IMG/VR virus record: IMGVR_UViG_3300028384_001500
Coordinates: 172,653 to 236,652 of that record
Length of the DNA: 64,000 nucleotides
Direction: 5' to 3' (one strand)
A model generated the notes under the pieces. It made no database searches. It saw only the letters and a list, made by a program, of their open reading frames with translations, and was not told the DNA's origin. The number at the start of each line of letters is the position of its first letter. The stretch's first letter is position 1. Positions 38,105-58,157 of this stretch are shown one piece after another. Both the position numbers and the translations under genes were made by a program.

Positions 38105-38439
38105 CTTTTATAATCATCTTTGAGTCTTACGACATCGTCTAGTTCAGGAGTACTTACTTCAAATACTTGTGTGAGAATTCCTTCTGGTGATCCAAATCGA
38201 TGGACTTGCCCAGGTTTAACATGATATGAAGTGCCCGGATTTAAAATTAATTTATTGTCATCTTTATCGCTTGTCCAGACGATTAGTTTACCCATTGTGA
38301 CATATATAGTTTCTTCTTTCTTTTGATGATACTGGAGACTTAATCGTTGTCCCGGTTTAATTGTTAAAACTTTACCTACGTATTTATCAGTTTCTGCCCA
38401 AACCTCTTCATGCCCCCATGGTTTTTCAACTTTTCTCAT
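38101..38439 (-). CDS. Cupin, mannose-6-phosphate isomerase type II C-terminal-like
   Basis: KPWGHEE...LTIKPGQRLSLQYHQKKEETIYV...HVKPGQVHRF...DVVRLKDDYKR. Confidence 0.85.
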   Translation of the reverse strand: MRKVEKPWGHEEVWAETDKYVGKVLTIKPGQRLSLQYHQKKEETIYVTMGKLIVWTSDKDDNKLILNPGTSYHVKPGQVHRFGSPEGILTQVFEVSTPELDDVVRLKDDYKR

Positions 38440-39158
38440 TCTATTAACCCTCTTGATCTTACTAGCCTAATTGTGTCCATTTGATTTTTTTCTTTTTCCG
38501 GTCTAAATTTTAAAGAGTTTGAATTAATTCTGTACAGATAACATATTTCATTTAAGAATTTTCTATCTTTTGCAAGAAGTAACATAGGAAGATAAAGCGC
38601 TTGATCGTAACCTCTTTCAAACCAGTTACCATCTAAGTCTTTAAAGTTTTCTTCTTTAATTTTTTTAAATAAATTCACTTTAAAAGTTTTAAGATGTGAG
38701 CTTACCCATGGATAGTGATATGGATTAATTTTTTCTGGTAACTCTCTAGAGATATTCATACCGTTTATATCCCAGGAATGTGCTGTCCAAAGGGCATCTA
38801 ATTGAGGATTGTTGTCATACTCTTTAAGAATAAGATCAACAGTGTTTTCATTGCACAAGGCATCGTCGCCATCAAGAACTGCTATAATTTGCTCTGAAAA
38901 ATCATTATATCCGCTCAGATAATCATAAATACCCTTTAACGCAAATTTCTTATGATCATGATTAATAACAGTTACTCTTTCTTTTTCATCTGACAAAACA
39001 ATTTTATTAGCAATTTCAAAAGTATCATCATTTGACATGTCATTTAAAATGACCCATTCCCAATTTGGATTTAATTGCTCTTTTAGTGACTCATAACATT
39101 CTTTTAAATGAAAAGAAGCATTATAAGTCGGCGTAACAAAACATACTGTTTTTCTCAT
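38436..39158 (-). CDS. Glycosyltransferase, GT2
   Basis: VTPTYNA...WEWVILNDMSNDDT...LDGDD. Confidence 0.85.
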   Translation of the reverse strand: MRKTVCFVTPTYNASFHLKECYESLKEQLNPNWEWVILNDMSNDDTFEIANKIVLSDEKERVTVINHDHKKFALKGIYDYLSGYNDFSEQIIAVLDGDDALCNENTVDLILKEYDNNPQLDALWTAHSWDINGMNISRELPEKINPYHYPWVSSHLKTFKVNLFKKIKEENFKDLDGNWFERGYDQALYLPMLLLAKDRKFLNEICYLYRINSNSLKFRPEKEKNQMDTIRLVRSRGLIE

Positions 39159-39458
39159 TTATCTTCCTACTTTTGTTTTAGTTGAATCTTTAAGTGATCT
39201 AACTGATTCTTGAATAAAATCTCTTCTACTTTCTAACTCAGAAACGCTTCTTAAAATATGCAATGTATCTTCTTCTAAAGTTGCTACTATTGTTAAATCT
39301 GCTTTAAATGCGTCTTCTTCTAACTGTTCTACTAATCGATTAAGTTTTTCAGAAAGTGTTCTGCACTTTGTCCTAAGTTCAACGTCGCATTTGTTAAAAG
39401 ATTGCTGGCTTTGTATAAAAACCTGTGAAAAAACTTGGAATAAATTTTCTTGTTCCAT
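39159..39458 (-). CDS. Hypothetical coiled-coil protein
   Basis: 99 aa, abuts both neighbours in the operon, GGAG SD, heptad-like pattern. Confidence 0.55.
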   Translation of the reverse strand: MEQENLFQVFSQVFIQSQQSFNKCDVELRTKCRTLSEKLNRLVEQLEEDAFKADLTIVATLEEDTLHILRSVSELESRRDFIQESVRSLKDSTKTKVGR

Positions 39459-39459
39459 A

Positions 39460-41385
39460 TTAACTCCTTTTCTGTAACCAGCCTTTGATTACTTCTGGGT
39501 GATCCGACTCTACAAAATACCAATTTGTAGGTTTACTAAAGTCAACTCTACTGTGGAATATCCAGCCACCCATTTCATTATCTAATCTTTTTGCCATATT
39601 TACAATTTCTTTTTCTGAAACTTCTGACCATGGTTTATTAAAAAACTTATTGTTCTCTGCATTATCAACAACTTGCTTATTATACAAGCTAGCGTGAAAC
39701 TTGCTCCAAAAATCTCTATAGTTGTATATTTTTCTTTGAATGTCAAACCATGAATAATGATGAACTGACGGTAATTCTTTTAGTGCAGCGTTAATAAAGT
39801 TAACGTAAACATCTAGACTAGAATTTTTAAAATTTTCGTCTGTCAATATTTTCTGTCTTATTTGTTCATGTTGTGGTGTATAAAAATTCATATTAGGGAT
39901 AGGTTGATAATTATCAGTGTGAACGTAGTCACATCCGTCTGATCCTGCAGAGTATACATTTCCGTTTTCATCGTATCTTCTGTGTGCTGCAGGTATATCA
40001 TGCGTTATATGTGTATCATTTCTAGATAATCTCCATTTCCATGGGTGTACATCTAGTCTTACTTTGTTTTGTTTTCCCCAATAGTCTATGACAGGCAGGC
40101 AAACAACTTTAACAGCTTTAGGAATTTGCCTGGCTAGCTTTTTAACTTTTTTATAGTCACTTTCATGAACAATTTCATCAACATCAGACTGCCAACACCA
40201 GTCTCCCGTGCATAAAGATCTTGCAACTGCTTTTTGCTGACCATCGAACAAAGCAAATCGATAATGATCCCAGTCACGATTAACTTGGTACACTCTAAGT
40301 TTTTCTTCCTTTTCTGACCATTTTTGAAGTTGCTCCCAAGTCCCGTCTTTTGACCCACCGTCGACTACAACAACTTCATCACAAAAACCCAATAAAGATT
40401 TAATAGATTCTCTCCATGGGTAGTCAGCGTCTATTACATCTTTTGTTGTTGTATAACCGCTAACAGTAACTTCTCTTTCAAAAAAAGATGTTATAACACT
40501 CCAAAAAGTATCGTGGCGAGAAAGTAGGTAGAAAAGAAGTTCGTCTGGCGAGTCACTTTGACTATTTTTAAACCAGCCTTCTTCTGAGTGCTGAACATTT
40601 TCATTTATAGATAATTCTAATCCTAAGAGCTTAGCTTCAATAGTTGTTCTAGGGCATGTATCACCGCCAAGAGGATGAAATGACAATCCTTTGAATTCTG
40701 ATAACTTTCTTAATAAATCATAATAAGGTAAACCTGAAAGTATTTCTGCTTCATCCTGGAGAATGTCTGTCACTACTTTTTTACTCTCAACAATTCCTTT
40801 TATCCAGCTATTACCGTCTATGATTGCCCATTTATTATTATTTGATTTTCTATCTGCCCTTAGCCTGGTCATAAATTCTAAGTCTTCTAAGCTAAAAATT
40901 GAACTTAAGACTGTTTGTTTGTTTTCTTTTAAAAATGGAAATCTTTGGTGATATATTTCAGATTGTTTCTTTGACATCCAAAAAATATGTTCTGACCCAT
41001 GCAAAAACGCAGAAATGATTTTTCCTAACTGGCTATTTTGACAGTCACAATCTTCGCCCGTCTGTCGTTTGTGCAGATCAATTGATCGGTATTGACAAAA
41101 TTTATAGTCATATTCAACAATTGCGTAGTTTAAATTTGCAACAATCATAGGTATTAACTCATGATTCATTGATCGATAATTAAAAAATACCCAAAACTTA
41201 TTAACACCTTGTTGAATTAATTCTTTTGTTACTTCCGATGATTTTAGTTTAAAAGTCGTATAAGGAGAAGTTTCAAAAAGAGCCTCTGTTGATTTTTCAG
41301 CTCCTCCTCCATATTCATCTAAAAAAGCGTCTGCAACAAAAACGACGCTAGAATCTAAAAAATTATCCATACAGTAATACCTCAT
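39460..41385 (-). CDS. Two-domain glycosyltransferase (GT-B-like N-terminus fused to a GT2 C-terminus)
   Basis: YGGGAEKST and DTCPRTTIEAKLLG in the N-half; CDEVVVVDGGSKDGT and WQSDVDE in the C-half. Confidence 0.8.
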   Translation of the reverse strand: MRYYCMDNFLDSSVVFVADAFLDEYGGGAEKSTEALFETSPYTTFKLKSSEVTKELIQQGVNKFWVFFNYRSMNHELIPMIVANLNYAIVEYDYKFCQYRSIDLHKRQTGEDCDCQNSQLGKIISAFLHGSEHIFWMSKKQSEIYHQRFPFLKENKQTVLSSIFSLEDLEFMTRLRADRKSNNNKWAIIDGNSWIKGIVESKKVVTDILQDEAEILSGLPYYDLLRKLSEFKGLSFHPLGGDTCPRTTIEAKLLGLELSINENVQHSEEGWFKNSQSDSPDELLFYLLSRHDTFWSVITSFFEREVTVSGYTTTKDVIDADYPWRESIKSLLGFCDEVVVVDGGSKDGTWEQLQKWSEKEEKLRVYQVNRDWDHYRFALFDGQQKAVARSLCTGDWCWQSDVDEIVHESDYKKVKKLARQIPKAVKVVCLPVIDYWGKQNKVRLDVHPWKWRLSRNDTHITHDIPAAHRRYDENGNVYSAGSDGCDYVHTDNYQPIPNMNFYTPQHEQIRQKILTDENFKNSSLDVYVNFINAALKELPSVHHYSWFDIQRKIYNYRDFWSKFHASLYNKQVVDNAENNKFFNKPWSEVSEKEIVNMAKRLDNEMGGWIFHSRVDFSKPTNWYFVESDHPEVIKGWLQKRS

Positions 41386-41881: not shown

Positions 41882-43246
41882 TTATCCTAAGATTGAAGCA
41901 GCTACTGCACTTAAATGAGATCTTTCTCCTCTTTTGAGTGCAATATGAGAAGCACAACTTTGATTTTTAAACTTTTCAGAAACTATAGTCAAACCATTTG
42001 AAAGAGTGTCAATGTAAGGAGTGTCAATCTGATCAACGTCACCTAGAAGAATAATTTTAGAATTTTCTCCCATTCGTGTAATTACAGTTTTTAACTCATG
42101 TATTGTCGCATTTTGCGCTTCATCCATGATAAGTATAGTGTCATTAAACGTTCTTCCTCTAATAAAAGAAAGTGGTGCAATTTCAATAACACCTTGCGAT
42201 CTTAGTGTATTGAAAAGTGAAAGATTATTATCTTTAAGGCCTACTCTTAAATTATCCATGATGGGTGCTAACCATGGTGCCATTTTTTCTTCCATTGAAC
42301 CAGGCAAGAAACCTATATCACGACCTACAGGCTGAACATTTCTTGTAAAAACTATTCGATCATAATAACCAGCCTGTACCATCGCATATGCTGACATCAA
42401 GGTGATAAATGTTTTTCCACTACCTGCTAATCCGGAGATGGTCACTAGAGGTAATGATGGATCTAGTAATGAATTTAAAGCATAAAGCTGTTCTCTATTT
42501 TTTGCTTTAATGTCAAGTCTAGCAAATGAATCGAGAAGATCTTTGGCTTTTTTTACGCGAATGATATCTCCTTCTTCATATCTACCAATAAATGATGAAG
42601 AATCATATTTAACACAAAGATACTCATTTTCATAAGGTTGACGATTATATTTTTCCTGAAACATGTCTAAAAGCTCTTCTAGAACATCACTATCATTTTT
42701 ATATCGATCTTTGCTTTTTGTGTAATCGTAAAGTTCATCAATTAAAAAAGGATCTAACGCTTCAATTTCAGAGTAACCTTTAAAAACACCTTTATCTTCT
42801 AGTTGTATTTTATCTTTATAATAGTCTTCAGAGTGTATTCCTAGAGAATCACACTTGACTCTAAAGTTAATGTCTTTTGTTACTAATATAACTTTTTGTT
42901 TTTCTTGGTTTTGTATTTCTAAAGCCAACGATATCATTTTATTATCTGAATATTCTGGGTCTAGACCGGCTGGTACTTTATTAAAACCTGAGAGTGCTAC
43001 TTTGATTGTCTGGCCATTTTCTAATTCTATTCCTGTGTGAAGAGATCCTTTTTGTCTAAGATCATCTAGAAAACGATTAACATGTCTTGCGTTTTCTCCA
43101 ACTAAACCTTTTTTATCTTTAAACCTGTCTAACTCGTCTAAAACCACTAATGGTATTAAAAGGTCGTTTTCTGGAAAAGAGTGAATTGAATCTTTATCGT
43201 ATAGCAATACGCAAGTATCAATAATGAATATTTTTCTATCTGACAT
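41882..43246 (-). CDS. phoH: PIN-PhoH fusion (PhoH2/YlaK-like)
   Basis: PIN motif IIDTCVLL...LDELD...DINFRVK; Walker A GLAGSGKT; DIGFLPG; RGRTF; DEAQN; GDVDQID; start placed at MSDRK. Confidence 0.9.
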   Translation of the reverse strand: MSDRKIFIIDTCVLLYDKDSIHSFPENDLLIPLVVLDELDRFKDKKGLVGENARHVNRFLDDLRQKGSLHTGIELENGQTIKVALSGFNKVPAGLDPEYSDNKMISLALEIQNQEKQKVILVTKDINFRVKCDSLGIHSEDYYKDKIQLEDKGVFKGYSEIEALDPFLIDELYDYTKSKDRYKNDSDVLEELLDMFQEKYNRQPYENEYLCVKYDSSSFIGRYEEGDIIRVKKAKDLLDSFARLDIKAKNREQLYALNSLLDPSLPLVTISGLAGSGKTFITLMSAYAMVQAGYYDRIVFTRNVQPVGRDIGFLPGSMEEKMAPWLAPIMDNLRVGLKDNNLSLFNTLRSQGVIEIAPLSFIRGRTFNDTILIMDEAQNATIHELKTVITRMGENSKIILLGDVDQIDTPYIDTLSNGLTIVSEKFKNQSCASHIALKRGERSHLSAVAASILG

Positions 43247-43256
43247 AATCATCCTT

Positions 43257-43285
43257 TTGTTAATTTTAAATTGTCGATGTATAAT
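43257..43285 (+). promoter_or_regulatory. sigma70-like promoter of the stand-alone sigma-region-4 gene
   Basis: TTGTTA-17 nt-TATAAT, then AAGGA SD before the ATG at 43315. Confidence 0.45.
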
Positions 43286-43314
43286 CTTAAATATCACATA
43301 AGGAAACGTATATT

Positions 43315-43811: not shown

Positions 43812-44072
43812 TTAATCTAAAATAATCTTTGGTTTGTCATCTTCTTTTAAATTATTATCTACTTCTTCTTCTTTGTTAATAACTTCTCTGTACTTTTTTA
43901 ATATATTATTAATATCTTTGAGTGCTTCATTGCTTTCTAGACTTAGGCATATACCATGTATTATGTCTAGTTTTTGTTGTTCAGAAACACCAAATTTAAG
44001 AACTTCAGAAACAATTTCTCTTGATTGTTGTTTTTGTCGGGCTAGTTTTTCTAACTTTACTGAATAGCTCAT
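43812..44072 (-). CDS. Hypothetical protein
   Basis: 86 aa in the operon, GAGG SD. Confidence 0.55.
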   Translation of the reverse strand: MSYSVKLEKLARQKQQSREIVSEVLKFGVSEQQKLDIIHGICLSLESNEALKDINNILKKYREVINKEEEVDNNLKEDDKPKIILD

Positions 44073-44555
44073 TTATTCCTCACTGTTTTTTATATAAAAT
44101 ATATCTTGTATAGTCTCTGATAGTATTTTTATTTTTTTACTACTTTCTAAGTTCAAAATTTTTAAATTGTGTTTATCATCGACAATATCTCTTTTTAATA
44201 CAATACTGCTAGGATACAAATCATTATCTATAACGTCCTCAACTTCTTCGTATAGATCAATAGTCGCATTATACTCGGATAAAATTTTAACTAACTTTTC
44301 AGGCAAACTAATTTCTATATCTTGTATTGATCTTACAGAACCGATCTCTTCGCTACCTACTTTAATTTCTGATTTGCATAACTCATAAACTAAATGTGTG
44401 ATTCCACAATTATTGCAATTTACATACTTAGGAATAATTTTTCCTGCATCGTCTATTTTAGAGTATACAGAGAACTTATGATATACAATTGGTTTGACAC
44501 CTTTATATAAGGGTAGTACACAGTGACATTCAATTAAGTGTTTTTGCCCGCGCAT
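44073..44555 (-). CDS. Hypothetical putative Zn-binding protein
   Basis: CHC and CNNCGITH motifs. Confidence 0.55.
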   Translation of the reverse strand: MRGQKHLIECHCVLPLYKGVKPIVYHKFSVYSKIDDAGKIIPKYVNCNNCGITHLVYELCKSEIKVGSEEIGSVRSIQDIEISLPEKLVKILSEYNATIDLYEEVEDVIDNDLYPSSIVLKRDIVDDKHNLKILNLESSKKIKILSETIQDIFYIKNSEE

Positions 44556-44557
44556 AA

Positions 44558-44794
44558 TTATTTAAGTGAGTTCTCTATTTGACCGGATGCTCTAGTAAAA
44601 GCTGTTGTCATGCTGGCTTCAACATAAAAACATACTTTTCTTAATTCTTCTGAATCTAGATTAATTTTTCCCTGGCCGGTTGCATCATTTAAGCTGGAAA
44701 CAACAGACTTTTTCATAAAGTCTACAACATCTGCAACGGATGCCATTACTTTGGATGCGTCAACTGTTTTTATTTTTTCTTCTTTTTTAGACAT
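44558..44794 (-). CDS. Hypothetical protein
   Basis: 78 aa in the operon, AGGAG SD. Confidence 0.55.
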   Translation of the reverse strand: MSKKEEKIKTVDASKVMASVADVVDFMKKSVVSSLNDATGQGKINLDSEELRKVCFYVEASMTTAFTRASGQIENSLK

Positions 44795-44804: not shown

Positions 44805-46037
44805 CTATAGAATTATTTTTTGGATATTATTGAAATTATTTTCAATACTTTTGACCTTCTCATCAATAATTTTAATACAGTCATCAGGAATGTAAAACTT
44901 TTGTCCGTCAATAACTATTTGTCGGTATACTTTTTTAATATTTTTCACAAACCTTAAAAAATAGTCTAGTTCTCTTGTCATTTTTTTATCAGATAAAATT
45001 CTATCTGGAAGATAAACATTTATTCTTTTTCCAGTAAACATTTTTAATCTTTTCTTTAATGGATCTACGTTTACGTCAGTTTTGATCATAGCATCGTCAA
45101 TTCTTCTTTTTAAAAAAGACCTATGAAGTTCTATTTTTTTCTTAGCAACACAAGGTTTTATTACAATCCCTTTGTTTGTAAAAGTTATCTTTTTTCCCGT
45201 TCTAAGTTTTTTTCTAACAGCTTGTGATATTGATTCTCCCATATCGCTAGAAACTACATGTCCTCCGTGAATTGCAGCGAAGTCATTTAATATGTTGAGA
45301 GTGTTTTCATCATTTACATTCAAAGAGACAGGATAAACTCTAAGTCTACCCATCTTATTGTTTTTGAGTATTGTCTCTTTTACTTCCTCATTCATTCCAA
45401 AGCAAAATATAACGTAGGGTATTTTTGTTTGATTTGCTTCAGTAAGTAAATGATGAATTTCACCAACAGACTCTATATAACCATTGATAATTACGTATTT
45501 GTAGCTCTTTGCTTCTTTTGGGATATCTCTAGTAAATGATGTATCATAATCAATATCAAATAAAAATTCGTCTAGACACTCAATTGATATATCTTCGCCT
45601 GGATAAGAATTAATATTTATGCTTCTTTCTAGACAAGCATTCTCAAATAGCCATTTTGCTAGTAGCATATTTTCTTTTCTAGAAAGAGATGATAAAAAGT
45701 CTTGTTGCATTTTCTTTTCAAATACAAACTTTTTACCTTTTTTAACTTTTGATTTAAAAAAACTGTGAATAAAAAGATCACCCATGTATGGGTAAATACT
45801 TTCACATTTATAATATTCGCTCATAATTATGTTTTTTAAAACTTCTGATCCATAGCAACTAGGCACTATATTTAGATAGTTTAAAGATGTATCTTCAATT
45901 AATTCTTTTGTGTCGTAAAGCGCTTTTCTATTTAAAGAAAGGGAGTTAAATACTTCCCTTTCTTTTTTAAGAAAACTTTGCACAAAGTCTTTTTCTAGAA
46001 TCTCTTTATGAGTCTCGCCAAAGGTTGTTGCTTGCAT
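44805..46037 (-). CDS. Degenerate GroEL/Cpn60-like protein (apical/intermediate domains retained)
   Basis: ILNDFAAIHGGHVVSSDMG aligns with GroEL MLQDIATLTGGTVISEEIG; YVIINGYIESVGEIHHLL with LLVDKKISNIRELL; LKKRLKMFTG with LQERVAKLAG; no GDGTTT. Confidence 0.7.
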   Translation of the reverse strand: MQATTFGETHKEILEKDFVQSFLKKEREVFNSLSLNRKALYDTKELIEDTSLNYLNIVPSCYGSEVLKNIIMSEYYKCESIYPYMGDLFIHSFFKSKVKKGKKFVFEKKMQQDFLSSLSRKENMLLAKWLFENACLERSININSYPGEDISIECLDEFLFDIDYDTSFTRDIPKEAKSYKYVIINGYIESVGEIHHLLTEANQTKIPYVIFCFGMNEEVKETILKNNKMGRLRVYPVSLNVNDENTLNILNDFAAIHGGHVVSSDMGESISQAVRKKLRTGKKITFTNKGIVIKPCVAKKKIELHRSFLKRRIDDAMIKTDVNVDPLKKRLKMFTGKRINVYLPDRILSDKKMTRELDYFLRFVKNIKKVYRQIVIDGQKFYIPDDCIKIIDEKVKSIENNFNNIQKIIL

Positions 46038-47946
46038 AAGTCAATATTTCCTCTGCTGATGCTTCATTATAGCCATATTCTTCAATTAAAGTTTGGATCA
46101 TATCAGTATATTTCTTTTTCTGGTCGTCATCACGCGATTTTGAACGTGTAACAATCCTTGCGATATCTTTTACTGATGAAATTAAATATTGTTCGATTGC
46201 TTCTTTTAAAGGGCCGTATGAACGATAATCAACAGTTTCACCTTTTCTCATTTTAGAAAACATAAATGCAGTTACATCATTTCTAAATCCATCTCTAGCT
46301 GAACCAACAACACCAATCATTTCTTCAATTGTTCTCATGAACTTTTCATCTGGTTCTGACTCTTCTCTTGTGATTTTATTTTTTACTTTTGTTTTAGTTG
46401 TAAAACATTCTGCGTTATCTAAGTATGAATCAAATAGTGATTGTGCTTGCTCTTCATATGCAGTAATAAATGCTTTTGCAATTTCAGTTTCTAGAATTCT
46501 GAGATATTCTTCACGAATAATCTTTTGTAGAATTTCAAGATATCTTGTCTTAGCATCTTCATCAATAATCTGTTCTTTGACTTGCTTAATTAAAGAGTCG
46601 ACAACATTAATCGGTGTAATCATACCATTATCTGAATCTGAAAGTGCTGCATCCAAGGCTTTCATAATAAAGCGTGTAGAAATACCTTCCATACCTTCGT
46701 GCTTTGCCTCATCTTTAAGATCACGAATATCGACTTTCTTTACGCGACCTTTTTCAATAATTGCCTCACCATTGTAAATTTTCATTTTAGTTAGTAAGTC
46801 ACACTTTCTAGACTGTTGTAGGCGGCTCATCACTGAAAACATTGAAGCTATTTTTAAAGTATGCGGTGCGATATGTGCATCTGTAAAGTCAGACCTACGA
46901 ATTATCTTTTCATAAATTTTTTGTTCTTGATCTAATTCTAACACATAAGGTACTTCAATCTTTAATACCCTGTCCAAAATAGCCTCGTTAGTGTGTTCAG
47001 ATTTAAATCTGTTCCACTCTGACTCATTACAATGAGATAATATCACCCCATCAAAATAAAGCATATCGTTCTTACCTGGGGTAGGCACACGTTTCTCTTG
47101 GGTTGCTGTTAACATTGTATGTAAGAATTCAATCTCATTCTTGAAAACTTCTACAAACTCAACAATACCTCGATTACCTACGTTAAATGCTCCATTAAGT
47201 GACAAAACTCTTGGATCGTCTTCTGGATATAGGTCTAATTTACTAATATCTTCTGTACCAATAAGGACTGACACGTCTTGGCTATTAGCATCCATTGGCG
47301 GAACTACAGCAATACCTCTGCGTCCTCTTTGCGAGTAACCGGTTTGCTTTACTGGAAACTTTTCATACTCACCGTTAAATTCATTCATTAATCTATGACG
47401 ACATACCGGACATAAGTCACCTTCAATATGCACACCTAGTAATTCTTCAAAGTCTTTTCTGAGACTCCTAGGTAGAAGGTGAAGTGGTTCTTCTCTTACC
47501 GGGCAGCCATCTAAGTAGTAATAATCTTCTGCTTCTTCCAGTGCACGCTTTACTGAATCGATCAACGCTGATTTTCCTGCTCCAACAGGACCCATTAAGA
47601 GAAGAACCTGCCGACTTTCTTCACCTTTAAAAGCTGCCGACTTCATAAATCTCATCAATTTGTTGATGACAGACTCCATTCCAAAAAATTCTTTTTCAAA
47701 ATAGTCATACTTTCTAATTTTGTCGCCATTAAAAATATCTCGATAACCATCAGTCCCTACATCCAAAGTATCAACACCACGATTTTTAATAGTTTCATAT
47801 AATCGCTTATGTGCTAGCTTAACTGATCCCGGTTTTTCTCTGACTAATTCAAGATAGTCTAAAAAAGTACCTTCAAACTTAACTTTATTTTTTTGTTCTC
47901 TTTGCTTTTTAATCATTGTCAAAAAGTCTTTTTGATTGCGTGCCAT
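46006..47946 (-). CDS. prkA: PrkA/YeaG AAA+ ATPase (serine kinase family)
   Basis: Walker A GPVGAGKS; CPVREEPLHLLP; GDLCPVC; GNRGIVEFVEVFK; HCNESEW; EAILDR; EGMEGISTRF. Confidence 0.92.
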   Translation of the reverse strand: MARNQKDFLTMIKKQREQKNKVKFEGTFLDYLELVREKPGSVKLAHKRLYETIKNRGVDTLDVGTDGYRDIFNGDKIRKYDYFEKEFFGMESVINKLMRFMKSAAFKGEESRQVLLLMGPVGAGKSALIDSVKRALEEAEDYYYLDGCPVREEPLHLLPRSLRKDFEELLGVHIEGDLCPVCRHRLMNEFNGEYEKFPVKQTGYSQRGRRGIAVVPPMDANSQDVSVLIGTEDISKLDLYPEDDPRVLSLNGAFNVGNRGIVEFVEVFKNEIEFLHTMLTATQEKRVPTPGKNDMLYFDGVILSHCNESEWNRFKSEHTNEAILDRVLKIEVPYVLELDQEQKIYEKIIRRSDFTDAHIAPHTLKIASMFSVMSRLQQSRKCDLLTKMKIYNGEAIIEKGRVKKVDIRDLKDEAKHEGMEGISTRFIMKALDAALSDSDNGMITPINVVDSLIKQVKEQIIDEDAKTRYLEILQKIIREEYLRILETEIAKAFITAYEEQAQSLFDSYLDNAECFTTKTKVKNKITREESEPDEKFMRTIEEMIGVVGSARDGFRNDVTAFMFSKMRKGETVDYRSYGPLKEAIEQYLISSVKDIARIVTRSKSRDDDQKKKYTDMIQTLIEEYGYNEASAEEILTYASNNLWRDS

Positions 47947-47971
47947 ATATTGTTACTCCTGCTTCTCTATA

Positions 47972-48000
47972 ATAATATTTTATTATATTTTGTATGTAAA
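47972..48000 (-). promoter_or_regulatory. sigma70-like promoter upstream of prkA
   Basis: TTTACA-17 nt-TATTAT, then AGGAG SD. Confidence 0.45.
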
Positions 48001-48001
48001 A

Positions 48002-49327
48002 TTAAATTTCCCAAACTTCCTCTTCAATTATTGTATAAAGCTTAGCGTCAAAAGGCCAGAGATCTCTGACGTGATCCATTACTTTATCAGCATAGTCTAA
48101 GTCTAGGTCTCGACCGTCATGTTCATGCTTAAGAACTAAAGTGTTTTCACTGTCAACACTATCAACATAAACATGAGGTATCATGTTAATACCTGTGTTT
48201 CTAATAAGTTCATTCCTGACCGTCTTCCAGTCATCGTGATCTGTTACTTCAGATACAATTGCGCTACCGTCTTTTTGATTCTCGTAAGCGAAGAAGTTTA
48301 ATTCTCTAAAGTCTTCTTCATCAAGAAGCATTCTTAGAGCTGAGACATCATCGCTAGTTTCTCTGACTTCAAAGCACCTTTCTAGCCCGTATTCTCTCTC
48401 TAGTTTTTGGAAAATATAAAAACCAACATGATATGGGTTAACTCTTCCTAAATGAGGCCTGACAACTGCATTATGCATCTTTAAAAAAGGAAGATGCATT
48501 TCATCAGGTAATTTTAAATCATGCAATATTTTATAATGCCAAAATGAAGCCCACCCCTCGTTAAGGATTTTTGTTTGAATCTGTGGCATAAAGTACTGAC
48601 TGTCTTCTTTGACGATATCAATTAAGTCTAATTGCCAGTCTTCAAAATAGTCTGGATAGTATTCAGAAAAGAATGCCAACATATCGTGGTCAGGTTGAAG
48701 AAGTCTTTGCTTGTTAAGGACGTCTGAATTAAGAATAATCCCTTTTTCTTTGTATTTGTTGTATTTTTTAATTTCACCTGCTTTGATTTCAGACTTAGAC
48801 TTTCTTGGTGAGTTATATCTATTTGTTTGATATTTAATTGCATGTAAGTTATCTAAAAAAGTTTCTACTTTTTCTTGACCAATCAAAGGATCTTCAACAT
48901 ATCCTTGAATTCTTTTTTTAGCATTTCTCATTCTAGAAACTACATGACTCGGGTCAGTATTCTTAAAACATCTGTTGTTTTTAAAGAAGTCACTGTGTCC
49001 AACACAATGTGCCATAATTAATATCTGTAAGTATAACGGGTTTTGCATCATCAGATATGCTATTGAAGGATTGGAATTAATAATCATTTCATAAGGCAAA
49101 CCTGTCTGACCTAAATTATAATTAAAATGTGTCTGCTCAAATGATTTACCAAATGACCAATGGTTGTAGTGGCTAGGCATTCCATGATAAGACATGTGAC
49201 CAATCATCTCGTAATAGTCACATATCTCATAAGTTATTTCGTGCCAGTCTAATCCATAACCTTTAGCTATTTCGCATATTTTATCATCCCATTCTTTGAG
49301 ATCACTTACACCCCAATCAGAGCTCAT
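48002..49327 (-). CDS. spoVR: SpoVR/YcgB family protein
   Basis: GMPSHYNHWSFGKSFE; LPYEMIINSNPSIAYL; AHCVGHSDFFKNN; TKILNEGWASFWH; NPYHVG; start placed at MSSDW with GGAGG SD. Confidence 0.92.
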   Translation of the reverse strand: MSSDWGVSDLKEWDDKICEIAKGYGLDWHEITYEICDYYEMIGHMSYHGMPSHYNHWSFGKSFEQTHFNYNLGQTGLPYEMIINSNPSIAYLMMQNPLYLQILIMAHCVGHSDFFKNNRCFKNTDPSHVVSRMRNAKKRIQGYVEDPLIGQEKVETFLDNLHAIKYQTNRYNSPRKSKSEIKAGEIKKYNKYKEKGIILNSDVLNKQRLLQPDHDMLAFFSEYYPDYFEDWQLDLIDIVKEDSQYFMPQIQTKILNEGWASFWHYKILHDLKLPDEMHLPFLKMHNAVVRPHLGRVNPYHVGFYIFQKLEREYGLERCFEVRETSDDVSALRMLLDEEDFRELNFFAYENQKDGSAIVSEVTDHDDWKTVRNELIRNTGINMIPHVYVDSVDSENTLVLKHEHDGRDLDLDYADKVMDHVRDLWPFDAKLYTIIEEEVWEI

Positions 49328-50489
49328 ATTTTCCTCCAAAAAGTTTGGCAAATTGCGGCCAGACATCTTCTTTTTCTCTAATTCTACATACTTTAAAACT
49401 ATCACTAGTTAGAACTTCAAAAACTTTTGCCATTTCTTCTCCCCAAATGCTTTCTTGTTCAGGTTTAATTTGAATATAACCGGCAAGTTGACTAATATCT
49501 GAAAGATAAGACATTTTTTCCAATGCCTTGTCATTATCTTCAGACCAGTTATCACCATCTGAGCAGTGGAACGTATAGATATTCCAAGCTGAAGGACTAT
49601 ATCTTTCATCAATAATATCTTCTGCCATTGCTAAACCGGAAGAAATATAAGTTCCTCCACTGCTGGCTTTCTTAAAGAAATCGTCTTCATTTACTTCTTG
49701 AGCTTCAGTTGTATGTGAAATAAAAACAATATCAACAGTTTGATATTTATATCTAATAAATTGATAAAGCAAAAAGAAGAAAGATCTAGCCAAAAACTTT
49801 TTACGTTTACCCATCGATCCTGAAACATCCATTATCATAAAAATCACAGCATTAGTGATAGGTTTCTTTTTCACCTCAATATGTTTATATTTTAAATCAT
49901 CATAATGAAATGGAAACCTTTCACCACTTTCTGGGTCATATGTTCCGTTTTTTATCGCTTGTTTTTGTCTTCTTATTTTGTTTTTAAGAGTTTCCTTTTT
50001 AGACAGTCTTGCACGTATACCTTTCGGTCTATATCCCTTTCTTTTAATTTTTTCAGCCATTACAGTTGATGACTGTTTTTTATCTAGATCAGGAAGATTT
50101 AAATCGTCAAAAAGATACTTTGCCAATTCATCTAATGATATCTCTACATCATAAAAGTCTTCACCTTTATTATTTCCCGGTTTACCTTCTCCGGATCGAC
50201 CTTGACCTTTTTGTTTGGCTTGTCTTACAACTTGGCCCTTCTGAATATCTTGTCCTTGAGCAGAGCCTACTCCTTTAGAACCACTTCCTTTACCATGAAT
50301 AAATTGGTATTCTTTTATACCTCTTACAGGTATTTTAATCTTTTTCTTTCCATCTTGACCAATAATAGACTCTTCAGCAACTATATCATGAATTCCTTCT
50401 TTAATTGCTTTTTCAATCTTTTCTTTATGGCGTCTTCGATCAGAAGCTGATCGATCAGCAACTGTTTTATGATTTTTAAAAATTGACAT
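49317..50489 (-). CDS. yeaH: YeaH/YhbH (DUF444) VWA-domain protein
   Basis: DRRRH; FPFHYDDLKYK; MIDAS-like MDVSGSM; FISHTTEA; SGGTYISS; WNIYTFHCSDGDNW. Confidence 0.9.
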   Translation of the reverse strand: MSIFKNHKTVADRSASDRRRHKEKIEKAIKEGIHDIVAEESIIGQDGKKKIKIPVRGIKEYQFIHGKGSGSKGVGSAQGQDIQKGQVVRQAKQKGQGRSGEGKPGNNKGEDFYDVEISLDELAKYLFDDLNLPDLDKKQSSTVMAEKIKRKGYRPKGIRARLSKKETLKNKIRRQKQAIKNGTYDPESGERFPFHYDDLKYKHIEVKKKPITNAVIFMIMDVSGSMGKRKKFLARSFFFLLYQFIRYKYQTVDIVFISHTTEAQEVNEDDFFKKASSGGTYISSGLAMAEDIIDERYSPSAWNIYTFHCSDGDNWSEDNDKALEKMSYLSDISQLAGYIQIKPEQESIWGEEMAKVFEVLTSDSFKVCRIREKEDVWPQFAKLFGGKYEL

Positions 50490-50570
50490 ATATTATTAAC
50501 ATCCTAATTGATAATTACCTATATATTCTATACTTAGTAATAGATAAAGTTAATATATTAGGTACATATA

Positions 50571-51512: not shown

Positions 51513-52217
51513 TCAAAGACTTAAATCAACATCAAAAACGTTATCTTTCATGTCATAAAGTTTTTGTATATCTCCTTCAGAGCGTAGTACCTTATATATA
51601 ATATTCTCATCAGCCATCTCGCCGCTCTTTTCGAGACCTGCTGAACGCATATCACGAATTTTTTTTATGAGCTTTTCCAGTCCTTTAATGTTTCTATTCA
51701 TCTTGGCTTCTTCGATCTCCATATCAATAAGTCTTTTAAAGTACTTTACTTTTCTAGCAACATTAACGCCGTTAAACTCTTTTCTAAACTTTTTAGGTTT
51801 TTCAATCCATTTATCTTCTTTGACTGAGTATACTCCACTACTAGCATGGGGTTCATCCTTATCTTGTGCATACAATTCAACTTCTATGTTAAGTACTCTG
51901 ATGTCGTGCCTGTTATTCCAGAATTGTCTTTTAGCTTTTAAAAATTCTTCAACTAAATCTACATCTTTATTGATACCTGCTGGGTCTACAATTATATGCA
52001 GGTCAATGTCTGAATAGGGAGTGTAATTATAGTTTGCGTATGATCCAGTCATTGTAATATCAATAACATCAATAGGTACACCTAGGTATTCAATAAAGAC
52101 GTCTGCTATTTTTAACAACTGTTCGCGTATTGCAGGTTTTAACTTTTCTTCTTTCCAAAGTTTTTCTGATAACTCTTGGTGAGGTAAATGTTGTTTTATT
52201 TTGCCAGTAATTGACAT
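51513..52217 (-). CDS. Pol-beta superfamily nucleotidyltransferase
   Basis: TGSYANYNYTPYSDIDLH (GS...DxD) and a downstream VELYAQD acidic motif. Confidence 0.8.
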   Translation of the reverse strand: MSITGKIKQHLPHQELSEKLWKEEKLKPAIREQLLKIADVFIEYLGVPIDVIDITMTGSYANYNYTPYSDIDLHIIVDPAGINKDVDLVEEFLKAKRQFWNNRHDIRVLNIEVELYAQDKDEPHASSGVYSVKEDKWIEKPKKFRKEFNGVNVARKVKYFKRLIDMEIEEAKMNRNIKGLEKLIKKIRDMRSAGLEKSGEMADENIIYKVLRSEGDIQKLYDMKDNVFDVDLSL

Positions 52218-53128
52218 TTATTTTCTCCGTATAATTCTCTGTACTTAAGTATGGCTTGTTCTTTGGCTTTTGCCTCAAAAACAACATCAATGTCTAAACC
52301 GTAGTCTTGTACTTCTTTTAAAATATAATCACTATGTGCTTGAGGTTTAACGTCTAAGCCTTCATTAAGCGCCTTAGACTCTGAATAGTGACAACAAGGT
52401 CGTATATCACCCCAAGTGCTAGCAGCTAGCTTAAGAGCCTCTTCTTCTGTTTGACCACCGGTGCAGAACTTGTGATGGTGATAGTCAAATACAATAGGTA
52501 CACCGAGTCGTTCGTAGACCTGATGTAAGTCTTTCGTACTGTACATGCTAGCTTTGTCGTCATTTTCTAGTGTGATACGAGTTTTGACACTTTCTGGTAG
52601 TCTTTCGTAGTTTTTACACCAGCGATCGATAGCTGACTGCTTATCGCCGTAGGTAGCACCAATGTGTATATTAATCTTTGACCATCGATCACGAGGCATA
52701 CCGATAGTGTCCATAATTTTACCGTGTATAGATAAATCTTTGACAGCATTTTGCACAACATGTTCTTTAGGTGATGTAAGAATATTAAAAGGGCCTGGGT
52801 GGAAAGAAAGACGTATACCACAATGCTTTGCATAAGCACCAACTTTTTTGAGATTGATTTGAATTTGATCCCAATGTGGCAAGTCTTCCAATTCATATTC
52901 AGAGGCCCATGGGAATAGGCAGGATGTCATTCTGAATACTTTAATGTTGTGCTTTTGATTCCACATAAGAATAGGCAAAAGGTTTCTTGTATTATGTTCT
53001 GCCAACTCTGAGGCATATGCAATACCTTTTGCTTTGAAAGTACGCTTGATCATGCCGCGATTTGTAGTAATTTTTTGTGTTTTTTGAAGGTGCATATTAA
53101 TACATGCGTAACCTAACCTAATTGTCAT
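52196..53128 (-). CDS. uvsE: UV damage endonuclease UvsE/UVDE
   Basis: RLGYACIN; RLSFHPG; INIHIG; LENDD; FDYHHH; HYSES; AHSDY; EAKAKE. Confidence 0.92.
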   Translation of the reverse strand: MTIRLGYACINMHLQKTQKITTNRGMIKRTFKAKGIAYASELAEHNTRNLLPILMWNQKHNIKVFRMTSCLFPWASEYELEDLPHWDQIQINLKKVGAYAKHCGIRLSFHPGPFNILTSPKEHVVQNAVKDLSIHGKIMDTIGMPRDRWSKINIHIGATYGDKQSAIDRWCKNYERLPESVKTRITLENDDKASMYSTKDLHQVYERLGVPIVFDYHHHKFCTGGQTEEEALKLAASTWGDIRPCCHYSESKALNEGLDVKPQAHSDYILKEVQDYGLDIDVVFEAKAKEQAILKYRELYGENKCQLLAK

Positions 53129-53215
53129 AATAACTCCTTGATTGTATAGATATATTATATACTGTTATTTTATACGTTGCATTTTTGCATAATACTTAAA
53201 ATTATAAGGGTTTGT

Positions 53216-54004
53216 ATGTATGTAGATTATTTTATTAAACATTGGAGAGAAATTATGTGGGGATCTATTCTATCTTTATTTGGCTTGTTTTATTTATTTA
53301 GTTGTCAAGGTCACCCAAAAATAATTACGCCAAAGTTTAATAATAAATTTCAACATCAACTCTCTAACTTTGTGTTCTTAGTCAAAGAAGTCAAATTAAC
53401 TTTTTGTGATGAGATTGACAAAGAAATGGGAACATGTGACGAAGTCCAGTTTCCTGAAGCTTCTGCAAGTGGAGTTGTAATATCTCAGTCAAGTTCTCAT
53501 ATTTTTATTCTTACTGCAAATCATTTTTGTGTTGACGCTCCTCCCGAAGAAGACATGTCTCTTGTAGGTGAAAGAAAAATTAAAGTATTTATTGGTGACA
53601 CAGAAAGAGAGTCTCAAGTTCTCTATGAGGATGAAGAAAACGATCTATGTCTTTTAGGTTCTATTAAGCTCGAAAAAGAAAACTTTAAGACTGTAAAGTT
53701 CGCAAAAAGGATGCCTAAAATAGGAGAGAAGGTCTATAATTTTGCCGCTCCTAACGGTATAGGCTCACCTAATACAAGACTCGTGTTCGACGGATACTTT
53801 GCGGGTTGTGAACAAAAACTCTGCATGTACAGCATACCTGCAACTTTTGGAAGCAGTGGATCAGCTGTTTATAATGAAAAAGGAGAGTTAGTTTCAATTT
53901 TAGTTGCAGCAGCAATAGATTTTGAAAATGTATCAATGGGCCCGGATATACAAAAAATATCTGAATTAATAATATCTATCGATGATGTAATAGATATTTA
54001 CTAA
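53216..54004 (+). CDS. Trypsin-like (S1) serine protease, membrane-anchored or lipoprotein
   Basis: Triad motifs LTANHFC, NDLCLL, GSSGSAVYN; N-terminal hydrophobic helix ending LFSC. Confidence 0.85.
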   Translation: MYVDYFIKHWREIMWGSILSLFGLFYLFSCQGHPKIITPKFNNKFQHQLSNFVFLVKEVKLTFCDEIDKEMGTCDEVQFPEASASGVVISQSSSHIFILTANHFCVDAPPEEDMSLVGERKIKVFIGDTERESQVLYEDEENDLCLLGSIKLEKENFKTVKFAKRMPKIGEKVYNFAAPNGIGSPNTRLVFDGYFAGCEQKLCMYSIPATFGSSGSAVYNEKGELVSILVAAAIDFENVSMGPDIQKISELIISIDDVIDIY

Positions 54005-58110: not shown

Positions 58111-58132
58111 CGTGCACCGCCTAATGATATAG

Positions 58133-58141
58133 TATAAATAT
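58133..58141. promoter_or_regulatory. AT-rich promoter motif in a divergent intergenic region
   Basis: Reads ATATTTATA on the minus strand (family motif) and TATAAATA (T4 late consensus) on the plus strand; orientation ambiguous. Confidence 0.4.
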
Positions 58142-58157
58142 ACACCAGGAGAAGAGA

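What the first reader, a model, noticed from the sequence alone, without database searches (positions are those of the whole stretch)
46006..50489. Complete yeaH-spoVR-prkA triad in a phage, in rearranged order
Seen: three intact genes transcribed yeaH, spoVR, prkA; prkA has its own sigma70-like promoter and leads into the GroEL-like gene. Established: bacteria commonly carry prkA(yeaG)-yeaH-spoVR(ycgB), linked to stationary phase, nitrogen starvation and sporulation; YeaH has a VWA/MIDAS motif (DVSGS here), and AAA+/VWA pairs act as remodelling chaperones. Inference: either control of host dormancy, or an AAA+/VWA/GroEL-like assembly machine repurposed for the phage.
Basis: partly seen in the sequence, partly recalled or inferred. 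Interest (0 to 1): 0.65.

Follow-up and report, generated by a model that had tools for sequence, protein, structure and literature searches.

The report
Phage-owned PrkA–YeaH–SpoVR operon, permuted
A large family of uncultured marine T4-like giant phages carries an intact, strongly conserved copy of the bacterial starvation-response trio PrkA/YeaH/SpoVR in a fixed, rotated gene order, usually followed by a shrunken GroEL-like gene; the genes are real and old in phages, but what they do during infection is still untested.

Summary
Window 46006-50489 (minus strand) encodes YeaH/DUF444, then SpoVR, then PrkA, all full length with very strong Pfam scores. The next gene (44805-46037) has a GroEL fold.

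The contig is a phage and not a host chimera:
- It has a gp23-type capsid gene, a large terminase and a baseplate gene, it is 96% coding, and its GC is even.
- The same gene order recurs in all 44 related IMG/VR contigs and in 2 contigs mis-binned into bacterial MAGs.
- All 73 bacterial loci with enough flank have prkA-yeaH-spoVR.

Each of the three phage genes is monophyletic. The best bacterial PrkA matches are 55-60% identical. dN/dS is about 0.02-0.2, and the Walker A and MIDAS residues are invariant. This points to one old capture of the whole operon, a rotation of its order, and then vertical inheritance.

It is not the first phage case. Thermus phages phiYS40 and Lalka have very divergent copies in the same rotated order. 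Ralstonia phage RsoM2USA has the canonical order, and PHROGs already holds all three families.

One new lead: the SpoVR model resembles zincin metallopeptidase domains, which suggests an AAA+/VWA/zincin-like protein-remodelling machine.

The function in infection, whether host reprogramming or assembly chaperone, stays open. No RNA run was listed and the complex prediction gave no verdict.

The parts
50490..50570 (-). Divergent intergenic region upstream of yeaH. The upstream neighbour is on the other strand, so the promoter of the unit should lie here. A weak sigma70-like site, TTAACT-17-TAGAAT, is at 50553-50525.
   Evidence: The site is a motif only and was not tested.
49317..50489 (-). yeaH/yhbH homologue (DUF444), 390 aa. 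It has a VWA domain with a complete MIDAS (D221, S223, S225, T280, D311).
   Evidence: Pfam PF04285 E 6e-117; phrog_19072; invariant columns; 65 of 70 bacterially conserved columns kept; dN/dS 0.04-0.2.
48002..49327 (-). spoVR/ycgB homologue, about 441 aa from ATG 49327 (the ORF is open up to GTG 49405). It is translationally coupled to yeaH by an 11-nt overlap with GGAGG upstream. The predicted fold resembles zincin metallopeptidase catalytic domains.
   Evidence: Pfam PF04293 E 1.5e-111 and PF24755; start site; AF2 pLDDT 83.3; VIA-wide Z 8-11.8 to DUF885, M1, M3, M32 and M4 peptidases; invariant H120, H124, D126, E270 in A6 numbering.
47947..48001 (-). 55-nt spacer between spoVR and prkA. 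It holds a sigma70-like pair, TTTACA-17-TATTAT (48000-47972), and an AGGAG ribosome-binding site.
   Evidence: conserved in 8 of 9 relatives; one of only 6 such pairs among 89 upstream regions of the genome. Function not shown.
46006..47946 (-). prkA/yeaG homologue, 646 aa: an AAA+ domain with Walker A GPVGAGKS, plus the PrkA C-terminal domain. It is the most conserved gene of the neighbourhood.
   Evidence: Pfam PF08298 E 8e-142 and PF06798 E 2e-77; PDB 9xip E 7e-98; 217 of 255 bacterially conserved columns kept; dN/dS 0.02-0.07; monophyletic phage clade.
44805..46037 (-). Compact GroEL-like protein, 410 aa. Its start overlaps the end of prkA by 32 nt. The apical domain is well conserved and the equatorial part is reduced. 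There is no GDGTTT loop and no Pfam Cpn60 hit.
   Evidence: phrog_5725 E 4.5e-16; PDB Cpn60 apical domain E 5e-9; AF2 pLDDT 86.9; Foldseek GroEL E 3.6e-18; VIA Z 19.3, rmsd 2.8 over 177 aa, with 385-390 aa aligned to GroEL 2-522; none of 29 members hits Pfam Cpn60; found after prkA in most related loci but not all.
43812..44794 (-). Three small conserved genes of unknown function (78, 160 and 86 aa). They follow the GroEL-like gene in most related loci.
   Evidence: no Pfam or PHROG family.
41882..43297 (-). PIN-PhoH fusion protein, the downstream syntenic neighbour of the block.
   Evidence: Pfam PhoH E 4e-50 and PIN_4 E 1e-28; phrog_2765; synteny.

Best explanation
This is a phage-domesticated copy of the bacterial PrkA-YeaH-SpoVR module.

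Origin. An ancestor of a large clade of marine T4-like jumbo phages captured the whole three-gene operon once, from a bacterium carrying the PrkA type seen today in Bacillota, Thermodesulfobacteriota and Binatia. The order was rotated from prkA-yeaH-spoVR to yeaH-spoVR-prkA. The block has since been inherited vertically under strong purifying selection, with PrkA the most constrained gene.

Expression (inferred). The three genes are probably transcribed from the divergent gap upstream of yeaH. yeaH and spoVR are translationally coupled, and prkA probably has an extra internal sigma70-like promoter, which would let PrkA be made separately or in excess.

Mechanism (inferred, not shown). As in bacteria, the three proteins act together as one ATP-driven protein-remodelling machine. 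PrkA would be the AAA+ motor, YeaH the VWA/MIDAS adaptor that grips an acidic site on a client, and SpoVR a zincin-like module that binds or cuts the client.

Role in infection (my preferred reading, least supported). The machine rewires the physiology of a nutrient-starved marine host so that the long replication of a roughly 300-kb phage can finish. The downstream compact GroEL-like protein would be an accessory client holder in most members of the clade.
For: Shown:
- Gene identities and their intactness.
- Phage nature of the contig: gp23-type capsid gene, TerL, a baseplate gene, 96% coding, even GC.
- The rotated order in 44 of 44 viral loci and 2 mis-binned MAG contigs, against the canonical order in 73 of 73 bacterial loci.
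- Monophyly of the phage copies for all three genes, with SH-aLRT 100, 92 and 94.
- Best bacterial PrkA identity of only 55-60%.
- The same position relative to TerL, 61-75 kb away, in three other contigs.
- dN/dS of 0.02-0.2 with saturated dS.
- 84-93% of bacterially conserved columns kept, including Walker A and the full MIDAS.
- The coupling overlaps and the conserved promoter-like spacer.

From the literature:
- yeaG, yeaH and ycgB are each other's best cofitness partners in six bacteria, and they form one operon in most bacteria (10.1101/072470).
- The operon is induced at growth arrest under ppGpp and RpoN control in Rhizobium etli (PMC3188799).
- PrkA is an AAA+ ATPase whose Walker A motif is needed in vivo (PMC9512850, PMC13001217).

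Inferred:
- The zincin-like fold of SpoVR.
- Host-directed use, from the PhoH neighbour and from marine viromes in which spoVR is an abundant viral gene (PMC8940887).
Against: - There are no expression data; no RNA run was listed.
- No interaction is supported. The PrkA-YeaH job gave no verdict.
- The host is unknown, so it cannot be said whether the host has or lacks its own triad.
- The zincin similarity is of middling strength (Z 8-12). Foldseek and a sequence profile found nothing, and the catalytic Glu of HExxH is absent.
- The biochemical activity of PrkA itself is disputed. It has been called a kinase and a protease, and a third study found neither activity (PMC9512850, PMC13001217).
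- In Thermus phages the triad sits between the portal or minor head genes and TerL, which favours a role in virion assembly over host control.
- The genome contigs sample was chosen by two peptide patterns and capped, so a closer bacterial donor could have been missed.
Confidence: 0.55

Rival explanations
1. The triad is a phage assembly or maturation chaperone. The AAA+/VWA pair, with SpoVR and the GroEL-like protein, would fold, insert or process phage structural proteins of a very large T4-like virion, and would not act on the host.
For: - AAA+/VWA pairs are typically maturation chaperones. This rests on established knowledge of the MoxR-VWA, CbbQ-CbbO and NorQ-NorD pairs and was not tested here.
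- A GroEL-fold gene is coupled to prkA in most loci.
- In Thermus phage Lalka27b the order is portal, minor head protein, YeaH, SpoVR, PrkA and then TerL. In phiYS40 the triad lies a few genes from TerL.
- The copy is old and behaves like a phage core gene, not like a recent host-like auxiliary gene.
Against: - In this phage the block lies 62 kb from TerL and the capsid gene. Its neighbours are repair, nucleotidyltransferase and PhoH genes, not morphogenesis genes.
- The GroEL-like gene is absent in one subclade that keeps the triad, and it evolves much faster.
- The nearest cultured T4-like relatives build similar capsids without the triad. Only 17 phage records have PrkA, and the immuto, Mel-JY01 and RM378 phages are not among them.
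Confidence: 0.25
2. The triad is a sporulation or dormancy switch. The phage would drive its host into, or hold it out of, a spore-like dormant state, as the gene names suggest and as a marine virome study proposed for viral spoVR.
For: PrkA and SpoVR affect sporulation in Bacillus (PMC9512850, PMC13001217). spoVR was the most abundant 'sporulation' gene in viromes from a marine oxygen-minimum zone (PMC8940887).
Against: - The triad is widespread and functional in bacteria that do not sporulate (10.1101/072470, PMC3188799).
- The phage's capsid and terminase are closest to those of phages of Flavobacterium, Microcystis and Rhodothermus, none of which forms endospores.
- The clade is abundant in open-ocean metagenomes, Tara included. 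That endospore formers are rare there is my own knowledge.
Confidence: 0.05
3. The block is host DNA, either through a chimeric assembly or as a recently picked-up passenger (moron) with no role for the phage.
For: Such cases exist. The record of Enterobacter phage LAU1 starts with E. coli-type yeaG-yeaH next to lambdoid tail genes, which is most simply host DNA at the edge of a prophage.
Against: - The same block with the same phage neighbours on both sides occurs in 44 independent viral contigs from many samples.
- GC is 0.34-0.35, as in the rest of the genome.
- No bacterial copy found is closer than about 60%.
- The phage copies are monophyletic with deep internal divergence and under strong purifying selection.
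Confidence: 0.02

Closest known systems
Bacterial prkA(yeaG)-yeaH(yhbH)-spoVR(ycgB) operon, in the subtype found in Clostridia, Sporomusaceae, Thermodesulfobacteriota and Binatia
   Same: It has the same three Pfam families at full length. PrkA is 55-60% identical, YeaH 43-51% and SpoVR 39-46%. Walker A, MIDAS and most invariant residues are kept.
   Different: The gene order is rotated to yeaH-spoVR-prkA. The block is carried by a virus. There is a spacer with a promoter-like site before prkA and a GroEL-like gene after it. The usual RpoS, RpoN or sigma-E control cannot be assumed.
Thermus phages phiYS40, TMA, YS40_Isch and Lalka
   Same: They are phage-borne and have the same rotated order, DUF444 then SpoVR then PrkA.
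   Different: They share only 28-33% identity and sit on long separate branches. phiYS40 has an extra 616-aa gene before prkA. The block lies beside the portal and terminase genes, there is no GroEL-like neighbour, and the hosts are thermophiles. The capture is probably independent, so the shared order may be convergent. The gene order in the Thermus host was not checked.
Ralstonia jumbo phage RsoM2USA and the huge phages LR756502 and LR756511
   Same: They are large phages encoding PrkA, YeaH and, where detected, SpoVR (PMC8504454).
   Different: RsoM2USA and LR756502 carry the YeaG type, and LR756511 sits on a long separate branch. All three have prkA first followed by yeaH, and SpoVR was not detected in the LR756502 locus. 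Identity to the window proteins is about 25-33%.
FtsH/YME1-type AAA+ zinc metalloproteases
   Same: A published analysis places PrkA in AAA+ clade III with YME1 (PMC13001217). The SpoVR model matches zincin catalytic domains. Together they would rebuild an AAA+ plus zincin pair.
   Different: Here the two parts are separate proteins, and a VWA protein is added. SpoVR lacks the HExxH glutamate, no membrane anchor was seen, and no protease activity is established. This is a likeness in how it might work, not membership.
Phage-encoded GroEL chaperonins (PHROG 5725; from my own knowledge, Pseudomonas phage EL gp146)
   Same: The fold is GroEL-like and is recognised by phrog_5725 and by structure search.
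   Different: It has 410 aa against about 550, gives no Pfam Cpn60 match, does not keep the nucleotide-binding GDGTTT loop, and diverges quickly.

Membership tests
PrkA/YeaG family | An AAA_PrkA domain (PF08298) followed by the PrkA C-terminal domain (PF06798), at full length | tested here: met
   473 and 261 bits against cut-offs of 25; profile coverage 2-357 of 358 and 1-255 of 255
PrkA/YeaG family | An intact Walker A lysine, which is needed for function in B. subtilis (PMC9512850) | tested here: met
   G119-P-V-G-A-G-K125-S126; all positions except A123 are invariant in 52 sequences
PrkA/YeaG family | Enzymatic activity (ATPase; kinase or protease activity is disputed) | not testable with these tools
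   The literature disagrees (PMC9512850 against PMC13001217)
YeaH/YhbH (DUF444) | A PF04285 match over the whole protein | tested here: met
   E 6e-117, 391.6 bits
YeaH/YhbH (DUF444) | A VWA MIDAS motif, DxSxS...T...D | tested here: met
   D221, S223, S225, T280 and D311 are invariant across phage and bacterial sequences
SpoVR/YcgB | PF04293 plus the SpoVR_C domain (PF24755) | tested here: met
   E 1.5e-111 and 5.7e-10; the ESM Atlas SpoVR cluster matches at TM 0.86
Canonical prkA-yeaH-spoVR operon | Gene order prkA, yeaH, spoVR on one strand | tested here: not met
   The window and all 44 viral loci have yeaH, spoVR, prkA. All 73 bacterial loci have the canonical order.
Canonical prkA-yeaH-spoVR operon | The three proteins act together (cofitness or a complex) | tested here: inconclusive
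   They are co-inherited and coupled, but the complex prediction gave no verdict
Group I chaperonin (GroEL/Cpn60), for the neighbouring gene | A Pfam Cpn60_TCP1 match and the GDGTTT nucleotide-binding loop | tested here: not met
   No Pfam hit in any of 29 members. Only the GD within 'YPxLGDxF' is kept.
Group I chaperonin (GroEL/Cpn60), for the neighbouring gene | The three-domain GroEL fold | tested here: met
   Foldseek E 3.6e-18; VIA Z 18-19 with 385-390 residues aligned to GroEL 2-522; apical domain rmsd 2.8 Å
Zincin metallopeptidases, for SpoVR | An HExxH motif plus a third metal ligand | tested here: not met
   The invariant motif is H120-x-x-x-H124 with no Glu after the first His. D126 and E270 are invariant candidates for the third ligand.
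Zincin metallopeptidases, for SpoVR | The zincin catalytic-domain fold | tested here: inconclusive
   In the VIA-wide search almost all of the top 50 matches are zincins, but Z is only 8-11.8. Foldseek found nothing at E<=0.001 and the sequence profile found nothing.
Auxiliary (host-derived) phage gene | Bacterial origin, with close host homologues | tested here: inconclusive
   The origin is clearly bacterial, but the capture is old: at most 60% identity to any sampled bacterium, and the sister group is unresolved. The host is unknown.

The most novel reading that the evidence does not exclude
PrkA, YeaH and SpoVR together form a split, three-protein ATP-dependent metalloprotease or remodeller: an AAA+ motor, a MIDAS adaptor and a zincin-like subunit. 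On this reading the biochemistry of this widespread bacterial stress operon has been misread because PrkA was always assayed alone. Phages would have captured the machine at least twice and converged on the same rotated order, and marine jumbo phages would have added a compact chaperonin-like client holder that has lost the GroEL nucleotide-binding loop.
Probability: 0.2. Interest if true: 0.8.

Novelty: new variant of a known kind. Interest (0 to 1): 0.55.

Why it matters
The PrkA-YeaH-SpoVR operon is one of the most widespread bacterial stress modules whose mechanism is still unknown.

A phage lineage that has kept all three genes under strong constraint over deep divergence, with the synonymous sites saturated, shows that the trio works as a portable, self-contained unit, away from its native regulators. 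That gives a compact natural test case.

The Thermus phages carry the same rotated trio and are cultivable, so the question can be put to genetics now.

The zincin-like fold of SpoVR, if confirmed, suggests a concrete biochemical experiment: assay the three proteins together, with metal. This could settle the published disagreement over whether PrkA is a kinase, a protease or neither.

For marine virology, the result shows that viral spoVR counted in viromes as a 'sporulation gene' belongs to this trio in T4-like jumbo phages and probably has nothing to do with spores.

Tried and rejected
- The search for RNA sequencing runs listed none, so read laying was not used and expression remains untested.
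- Complex prediction on PrkA 27-646 with YeaH 1-378 gave no verdict. It is evidence neither for nor against binding.
- The T4 late-promoter motif TATAAATA has 4 hits against 9.3 expected and is not enriched, so expression timing cannot be read from it.
- The generic promoter scan over 43-52 kb is below the shuffled expectation. The promoter claim rests only on conservation and on genome-wide enrichment.
- Foldseek of the SpoVR model against the PDB found nothing significant. The SpoVR profile against PDB sequences gave only chance hits. YeaH and SpoVR have no solved relatives by sequence.
- I tried to test whether the triad is a core gene of the clade using TerL-related contigs. The five large fragments without PrkA are 28-70% complete, and the expected position falls off their ends, so they are uninformative.
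- One protein comparison compared the GroEL-like alignment with its own first sequence and added nothing.
- Rejected: the chimeric host contig and the sporulation switch (see the rival explanations).
- Not done: the large representative protein search, which was judged unnecessary given the cost note; checking the gene order in the Thermus host genome; and inspecting the model coordinates, which are not available in the script box.

Full report
WHAT IS THERE

On the minus strand of the window, three ORFs fill 46006-50489 exactly. In the order of transcription they are:
- 49317-50489 (390 aa): DUF444/YeaH, E 6e-117.
- 48002-49405: SpoVR, E 1.5e-111, plus SpoVR_C.
- 46006-47946 (646 aa): AAA_PrkA, E 8e-142, plus the PrkA C-terminal domain, E 2e-77.

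None has an internal stop.

YeaH carries DVSGS at residues 221-225. In an alignment of 52 phage and bacterial sequences the whole MIDAS (D221, S223, S225, T280, D311) is invariant. The PrkA Walker A, G119-P-V-G-x-G-K125-S126, is invariant too.

The real SpoVR start is most likely ATG 49327. GGAGG lies just upstream of it, and the gene then overlaps the end of yeaH by 11 nt. That gives a protein of about 441 aa.

A 55-nt spacer separates spoVR from prkA.

The next ORF, 44805-46037 (410 aa), starts 32 nt inside prkA.

IS IT A PHAGE, AND IS THE BLOCK PART OF IT?

The window is the last 64 kb of an IMG/VR virus record of 236,652 bp, estimated 77% complete.

The record is 96% coding, almost all on one strand, at 35% GC. 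The block has the same GC, 0.34-0.35.

The genome encodes a gp23-type major capsid protein (PF07068, E 7e-66) and a large terminase. It also has a baseplate wedge protein inside the window, three tRNAs and a tmRNA.

Capsid and terminase are closest, at 39-47% identity, to Flavobacterium phage immuto, Microcystis phage Mel-JY01, Rhodothermus phage RM378 and an uncultured huge phage. The phage is therefore a distant T4-like jumbo myovirus of unknown host.

A pattern scan of IMG/VR with PrkA returned 44 distinct viral loci at 67-97% identity. A word search found more than 120 protein clusters at 81-97% identity in JGI, ENA, Tara and Logan data. The clade is thus large and common in marine metagenomes.

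In every one of the 44 loci the order is yeaH, spoVR, prkA. In most it is followed by the GroEL-like gene, two or three small genes and a PIN-PhoH gene, and in the closer relatives it is preceded by the same UvdE, nucleotidyltransferase and zinc-ribbon genes.

Three other contigs carry both TerL and PrkA, 61-75 kb apart and in the same relative order as here.

A chimeric host contig is therefore excluded, in my view.

COMPARISON WITH BACTERIA AND OTHER PHAGES

A scan of one genome per prokaryotic species kept the best 80 loci.
- The best bacterial PrkA proteins are 55-60% identical. They come from Clostridia, Sporomusaceae, Thermodesulfobacteriota, Binatia and others.
- All 73 bacterial loci with enough flank have prkA, yeaH, spoVR.
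- The only two loci with the phage order also have phage neighbours and the highest identities (73% and 69%). They are short contigs binned into a Luteolibacter MAG and a Legionellales MAG, and I take them for mis-binned phage contigs.

Maximum-likelihood trees (quick IQ-TREE search, LG+C20) make the marine phage copies one clade for each gene. SH-aLRT support is 100 for PrkA, 92 for YeaH and 94 for SpoVR. The PrkA clade has a long stem (0.53) and deep internal divergence. Its sister among three bacterial groups is unresolved.

Other phages with PrkA number 17 records.
- Ralstonia jumbo phage RsoM2USA and huge phage LR756511 have the canonical order.
- Huge phage LR756502 has prkA followed by yeaH; SpoVR was not detected in that locus.
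- The record of Enterobacter phage LAU1 merely starts with host-type yeaG-yeaH.
- Thermus phages phiYS40/YS40_Isch and Lalka27b have DUF444, then SpoVR, then PrkA. phiYS40 has one extra 616-aa gene in between. These genes are only 28-33% identical to the window's and sit on long separate branches.

The rotated order thus appears in two very distant phage groups. The Lalka trio lies between the portal and minor head genes and TerL.

PHROGs already has a phage family for each of the three proteins.

SELECTION

Of the alignment columns that are at least 97% conserved in the bacterial sample, the window keeps 217 of 255 in PrkA, 65 of 70 in YeaH and 62 of 74 in SpoVR.

Pairwise Nei-Gojobori estimates against related loci have saturated dS (above 1), so they are rough. 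dN/dS is 0.02-0.07 for PrkA, 0.04-0.2 for YeaH and 0.03-0.13 for SpoVR.

Against the closest relative, L002, PrkA has dN 0.024. The figures for PhoH and the GroEL-like gene are 0.117 and 0.453. PrkA is therefore among the most constrained genes of the neighbourhood, and the GroEL-like gene is the fastest evolving.

THE NEIGHBOURING GroEL-LIKE GENE

There is no Pfam hit for it, nor for any of 29 homologues. It is, however, recognised by phrog_5725 (E 4.5e-16) and by Cpn60 apical domains in the PDB (E 5e-9).

The AlphaFold2 model, built from 29 sequences, has pLDDT 86.9. It matches GroEL with Foldseek E 3.6e-18.

VIA-align gives Z 19.3 with rmsd 2.8 Å over 177 residues for the apical domain. For whole GroEL it gives Z 18-19 with 385-390 residues aligned to positions 2-522, and the fit is best to GroES-bound conformers.

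It is thus a compact three-domain chaperonin-like protein. The invariant residues all lie in the apical part. The nucleotide-binding GDGTTT loop is reduced to GD, so ATPase activity is doubtful; I did not test it.

The gene is missing after prkA in the most divergent subclade, where the next genes are on the other strand.

SpoVR FOLD

The model has pLDDT 83.3 and pTM 0.84. It has no Foldseek match in the PDB, and a sequence profile finds nothing.

The exhaustive VIA-align search does find something. Its 50 best rows are almost all catalytic domains of zincin metallopeptidases, at Z 8-11.8: DUF885, M1 aminopeptidases, M3, M32, M30, thermolysin and LasB, collagenases, ACE and YbeY.

The tool warns that Z below about 13 can be a common arrangement in helical proteins. 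What impresses is the uniformity of the list, not the score.

The topology fits: strands at 44-49 and 94-106, then a long helix at 111-130 that carries the invariant H120-x3-H124-x-D126, and an invariant E270 on a later helix. The glutamate of HExxH is missing.

I found no paper linking SpoVR to zincins in the searchable library, which does not prove novelty.

PROMOTER

The site TTTACA-17-TATTAT before prkA exists. In this AT-rich region such matches are no more frequent than in shuffles (30 against 38.7).

Two things raise it above chance. First, the two hexamers and the ribosome-binding site are kept in 8 of 9 relatives, although synonymous sites are saturated. Second, in the whole genome a stricter version of the pair is about 39 times denser in upstream intergenic DNA than in coding DNA, and it occurs in only 6 of 89 upstream regions, this one included.

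The T4 late motif TATAAATA is not enriched.

WHAT THE LITERATURE SAYS

- yeaG, yeaH and ycgB are each other's best cofitness partners in six bacteria. They form one operon in most bacteria, and their mutant phenotypes differ between species (10.1101/072470).
- In Rhizobium etli the three-gene operon is induced at growth arrest, under ppGpp and RpoN control (PMC3188799).
- B. subtilis PrkA was reported to be an ATP-dependent protease and not a kinase (PMC9512850).
- Carefully purified B. anthracis PrkA had neither activity, and was placed in AAA+ clade III with YME1 (PMC13001217).
- A PrkA homologue has now been solved (PDB 9xip, E 7e-98 to the window protein). I found no paper on it.
- For phages, the RsoM2USA paper lists the genes (PMC8504454).
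- A marine virome study counted spoVR as its most abundant viral 'sporulation' gene (PMC8940887).
- No paper in the library pairs PrkA with jumbo phages beyond RsoM2USA, or with auxiliary metabolic genes.

INTERPRETATION

Shown: an intact trio owned by the phage; a single origin within this phage clade; a fixed rotated order; strong constraint; and a frequent GroEL-fold partner.

Inferred: the three proteins work together as an ATP-driven remodelling machine, with an AAA+ motor, a MIDAS adaptor and a zincin-like module.

Least certain is the target. I lean towards host reprogramming of starved cells, for three reasons: the module's role in bacteria, the PhoH neighbour, and the long infection cycle a 300-kb phage needs. 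The placement in Thermus phages and the chaperonin-like partner keep an assembly role alive.

Expression could not be tested because no RNA run was listed. The one complex prediction gave no verdict.

NOVELTY

The trio in phages is already present in public records and in PHROGs, so it is not a new kind of thing.

New here are:
- the size and coherence of the marine clade;
- the rule that the phage copies are rotated while the bacterial ones are not;
- the parallel with the Thermus phages;
- the compact chaperonin-like partner;
- the zincin lead for SpoVR.

I rate it a new variant of a known kind, with interest 0.55.

Noticed in passing
window 48002-49327 (-): The predicted SpoVR fold matches zincin metallopeptidase catalytic domains (Z 8-11.8), and H120-x3-H124, D126 and E270 are invariant, but there is no HExxH glutamate. 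This could bear on the unknown biochemistry of the whole bacterial family.
   Followed up: partly
window 44805-46037 (-): A compact 410-aa GroEL-fold protein without a Pfam Cpn60 match and without the GDGTTT loop. It evolves about 20 times faster than PrkA at the protein level and is absent in one subclade.
   Followed up: yes
outside the window: G000 contig positions 36680-37040 and 1283-2204: The phage genome carries a tmRNA (predicted tag ANNNAHFESVALAA) and tRNA-Lys, tRNA-Met and tRNA-Leu genes (ARAGORN).
   Followed up: no
outside the window: G000 about 147.4-149.4 kb (L134:40-1989): The gp23-type major capsid protein is 649 aa. It matches relatives in two pieces covering only about 57% of its length, which suggests a large insertion.
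   Followed up: no
window 41882-43297 (-): A PIN-domain/PhoH fusion protein that is syntenic with the triad across the clade.
   Followed up: partly
window 51513-54004: A UvdE UV-damage endonuclease (52196-53128, -), a nucleotidyltransferase (51513-52217, -) and a trypsin-like peptidase (53177-54004, +) lie just upstream of the triad.
   Followed up: no
window 30785-41385: A cluster of glycosyltransferases with a UDP-glucose dehydrogenase-like gene, perhaps for DNA or surface modification.
   Followed up: no
window 58000-64000: GC rises from about 0.33 to 0.41-0.44 at the contig end. The ORFs there (for example 59575-61698, 707 aa) have no Pfam family.
   Followed up: no
L048 (CAZMUK010000072.1) and L049 (PBNF01000027.1): Contigs filed under a Luteolibacter MAG and a Legionellales MAG carry the phage-order triad, and L049 also has phage neighbours. 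They are probably phage contigs mis-binned into bacterial MAGs.
   Followed up: partly
L052 (Lutibacter sp. B2, JADPRS010000007.1): The PrkA of this Bacteroidota record nests inside Clostridia next to Marinisporobacter. The cause could be contamination, mislabelling or horizontal transfer.
   Followed up: no
L131 (Enterobacter phage LAU1, MN688132.1 1-3308): The phage record begins with E. coli-type yeaG-yeaH next to lambdoid tail genes. This is most simply host DNA at the edge of a prophage.
   Followed up: no
window 46006-47946 (-), PrkA residues 148-182: A Cys/His cluster (C148, H156, C179, C182; 'CPxxEEPLHLLP...GDLCPVCR') is shared by the window protein, the bacterial PrkA proteins and PDB 9xip, and kept in about two thirds of the phage rows (0.64-0.66). 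It may be a zinc site inside the AAA+ domain.
   Followed up: no
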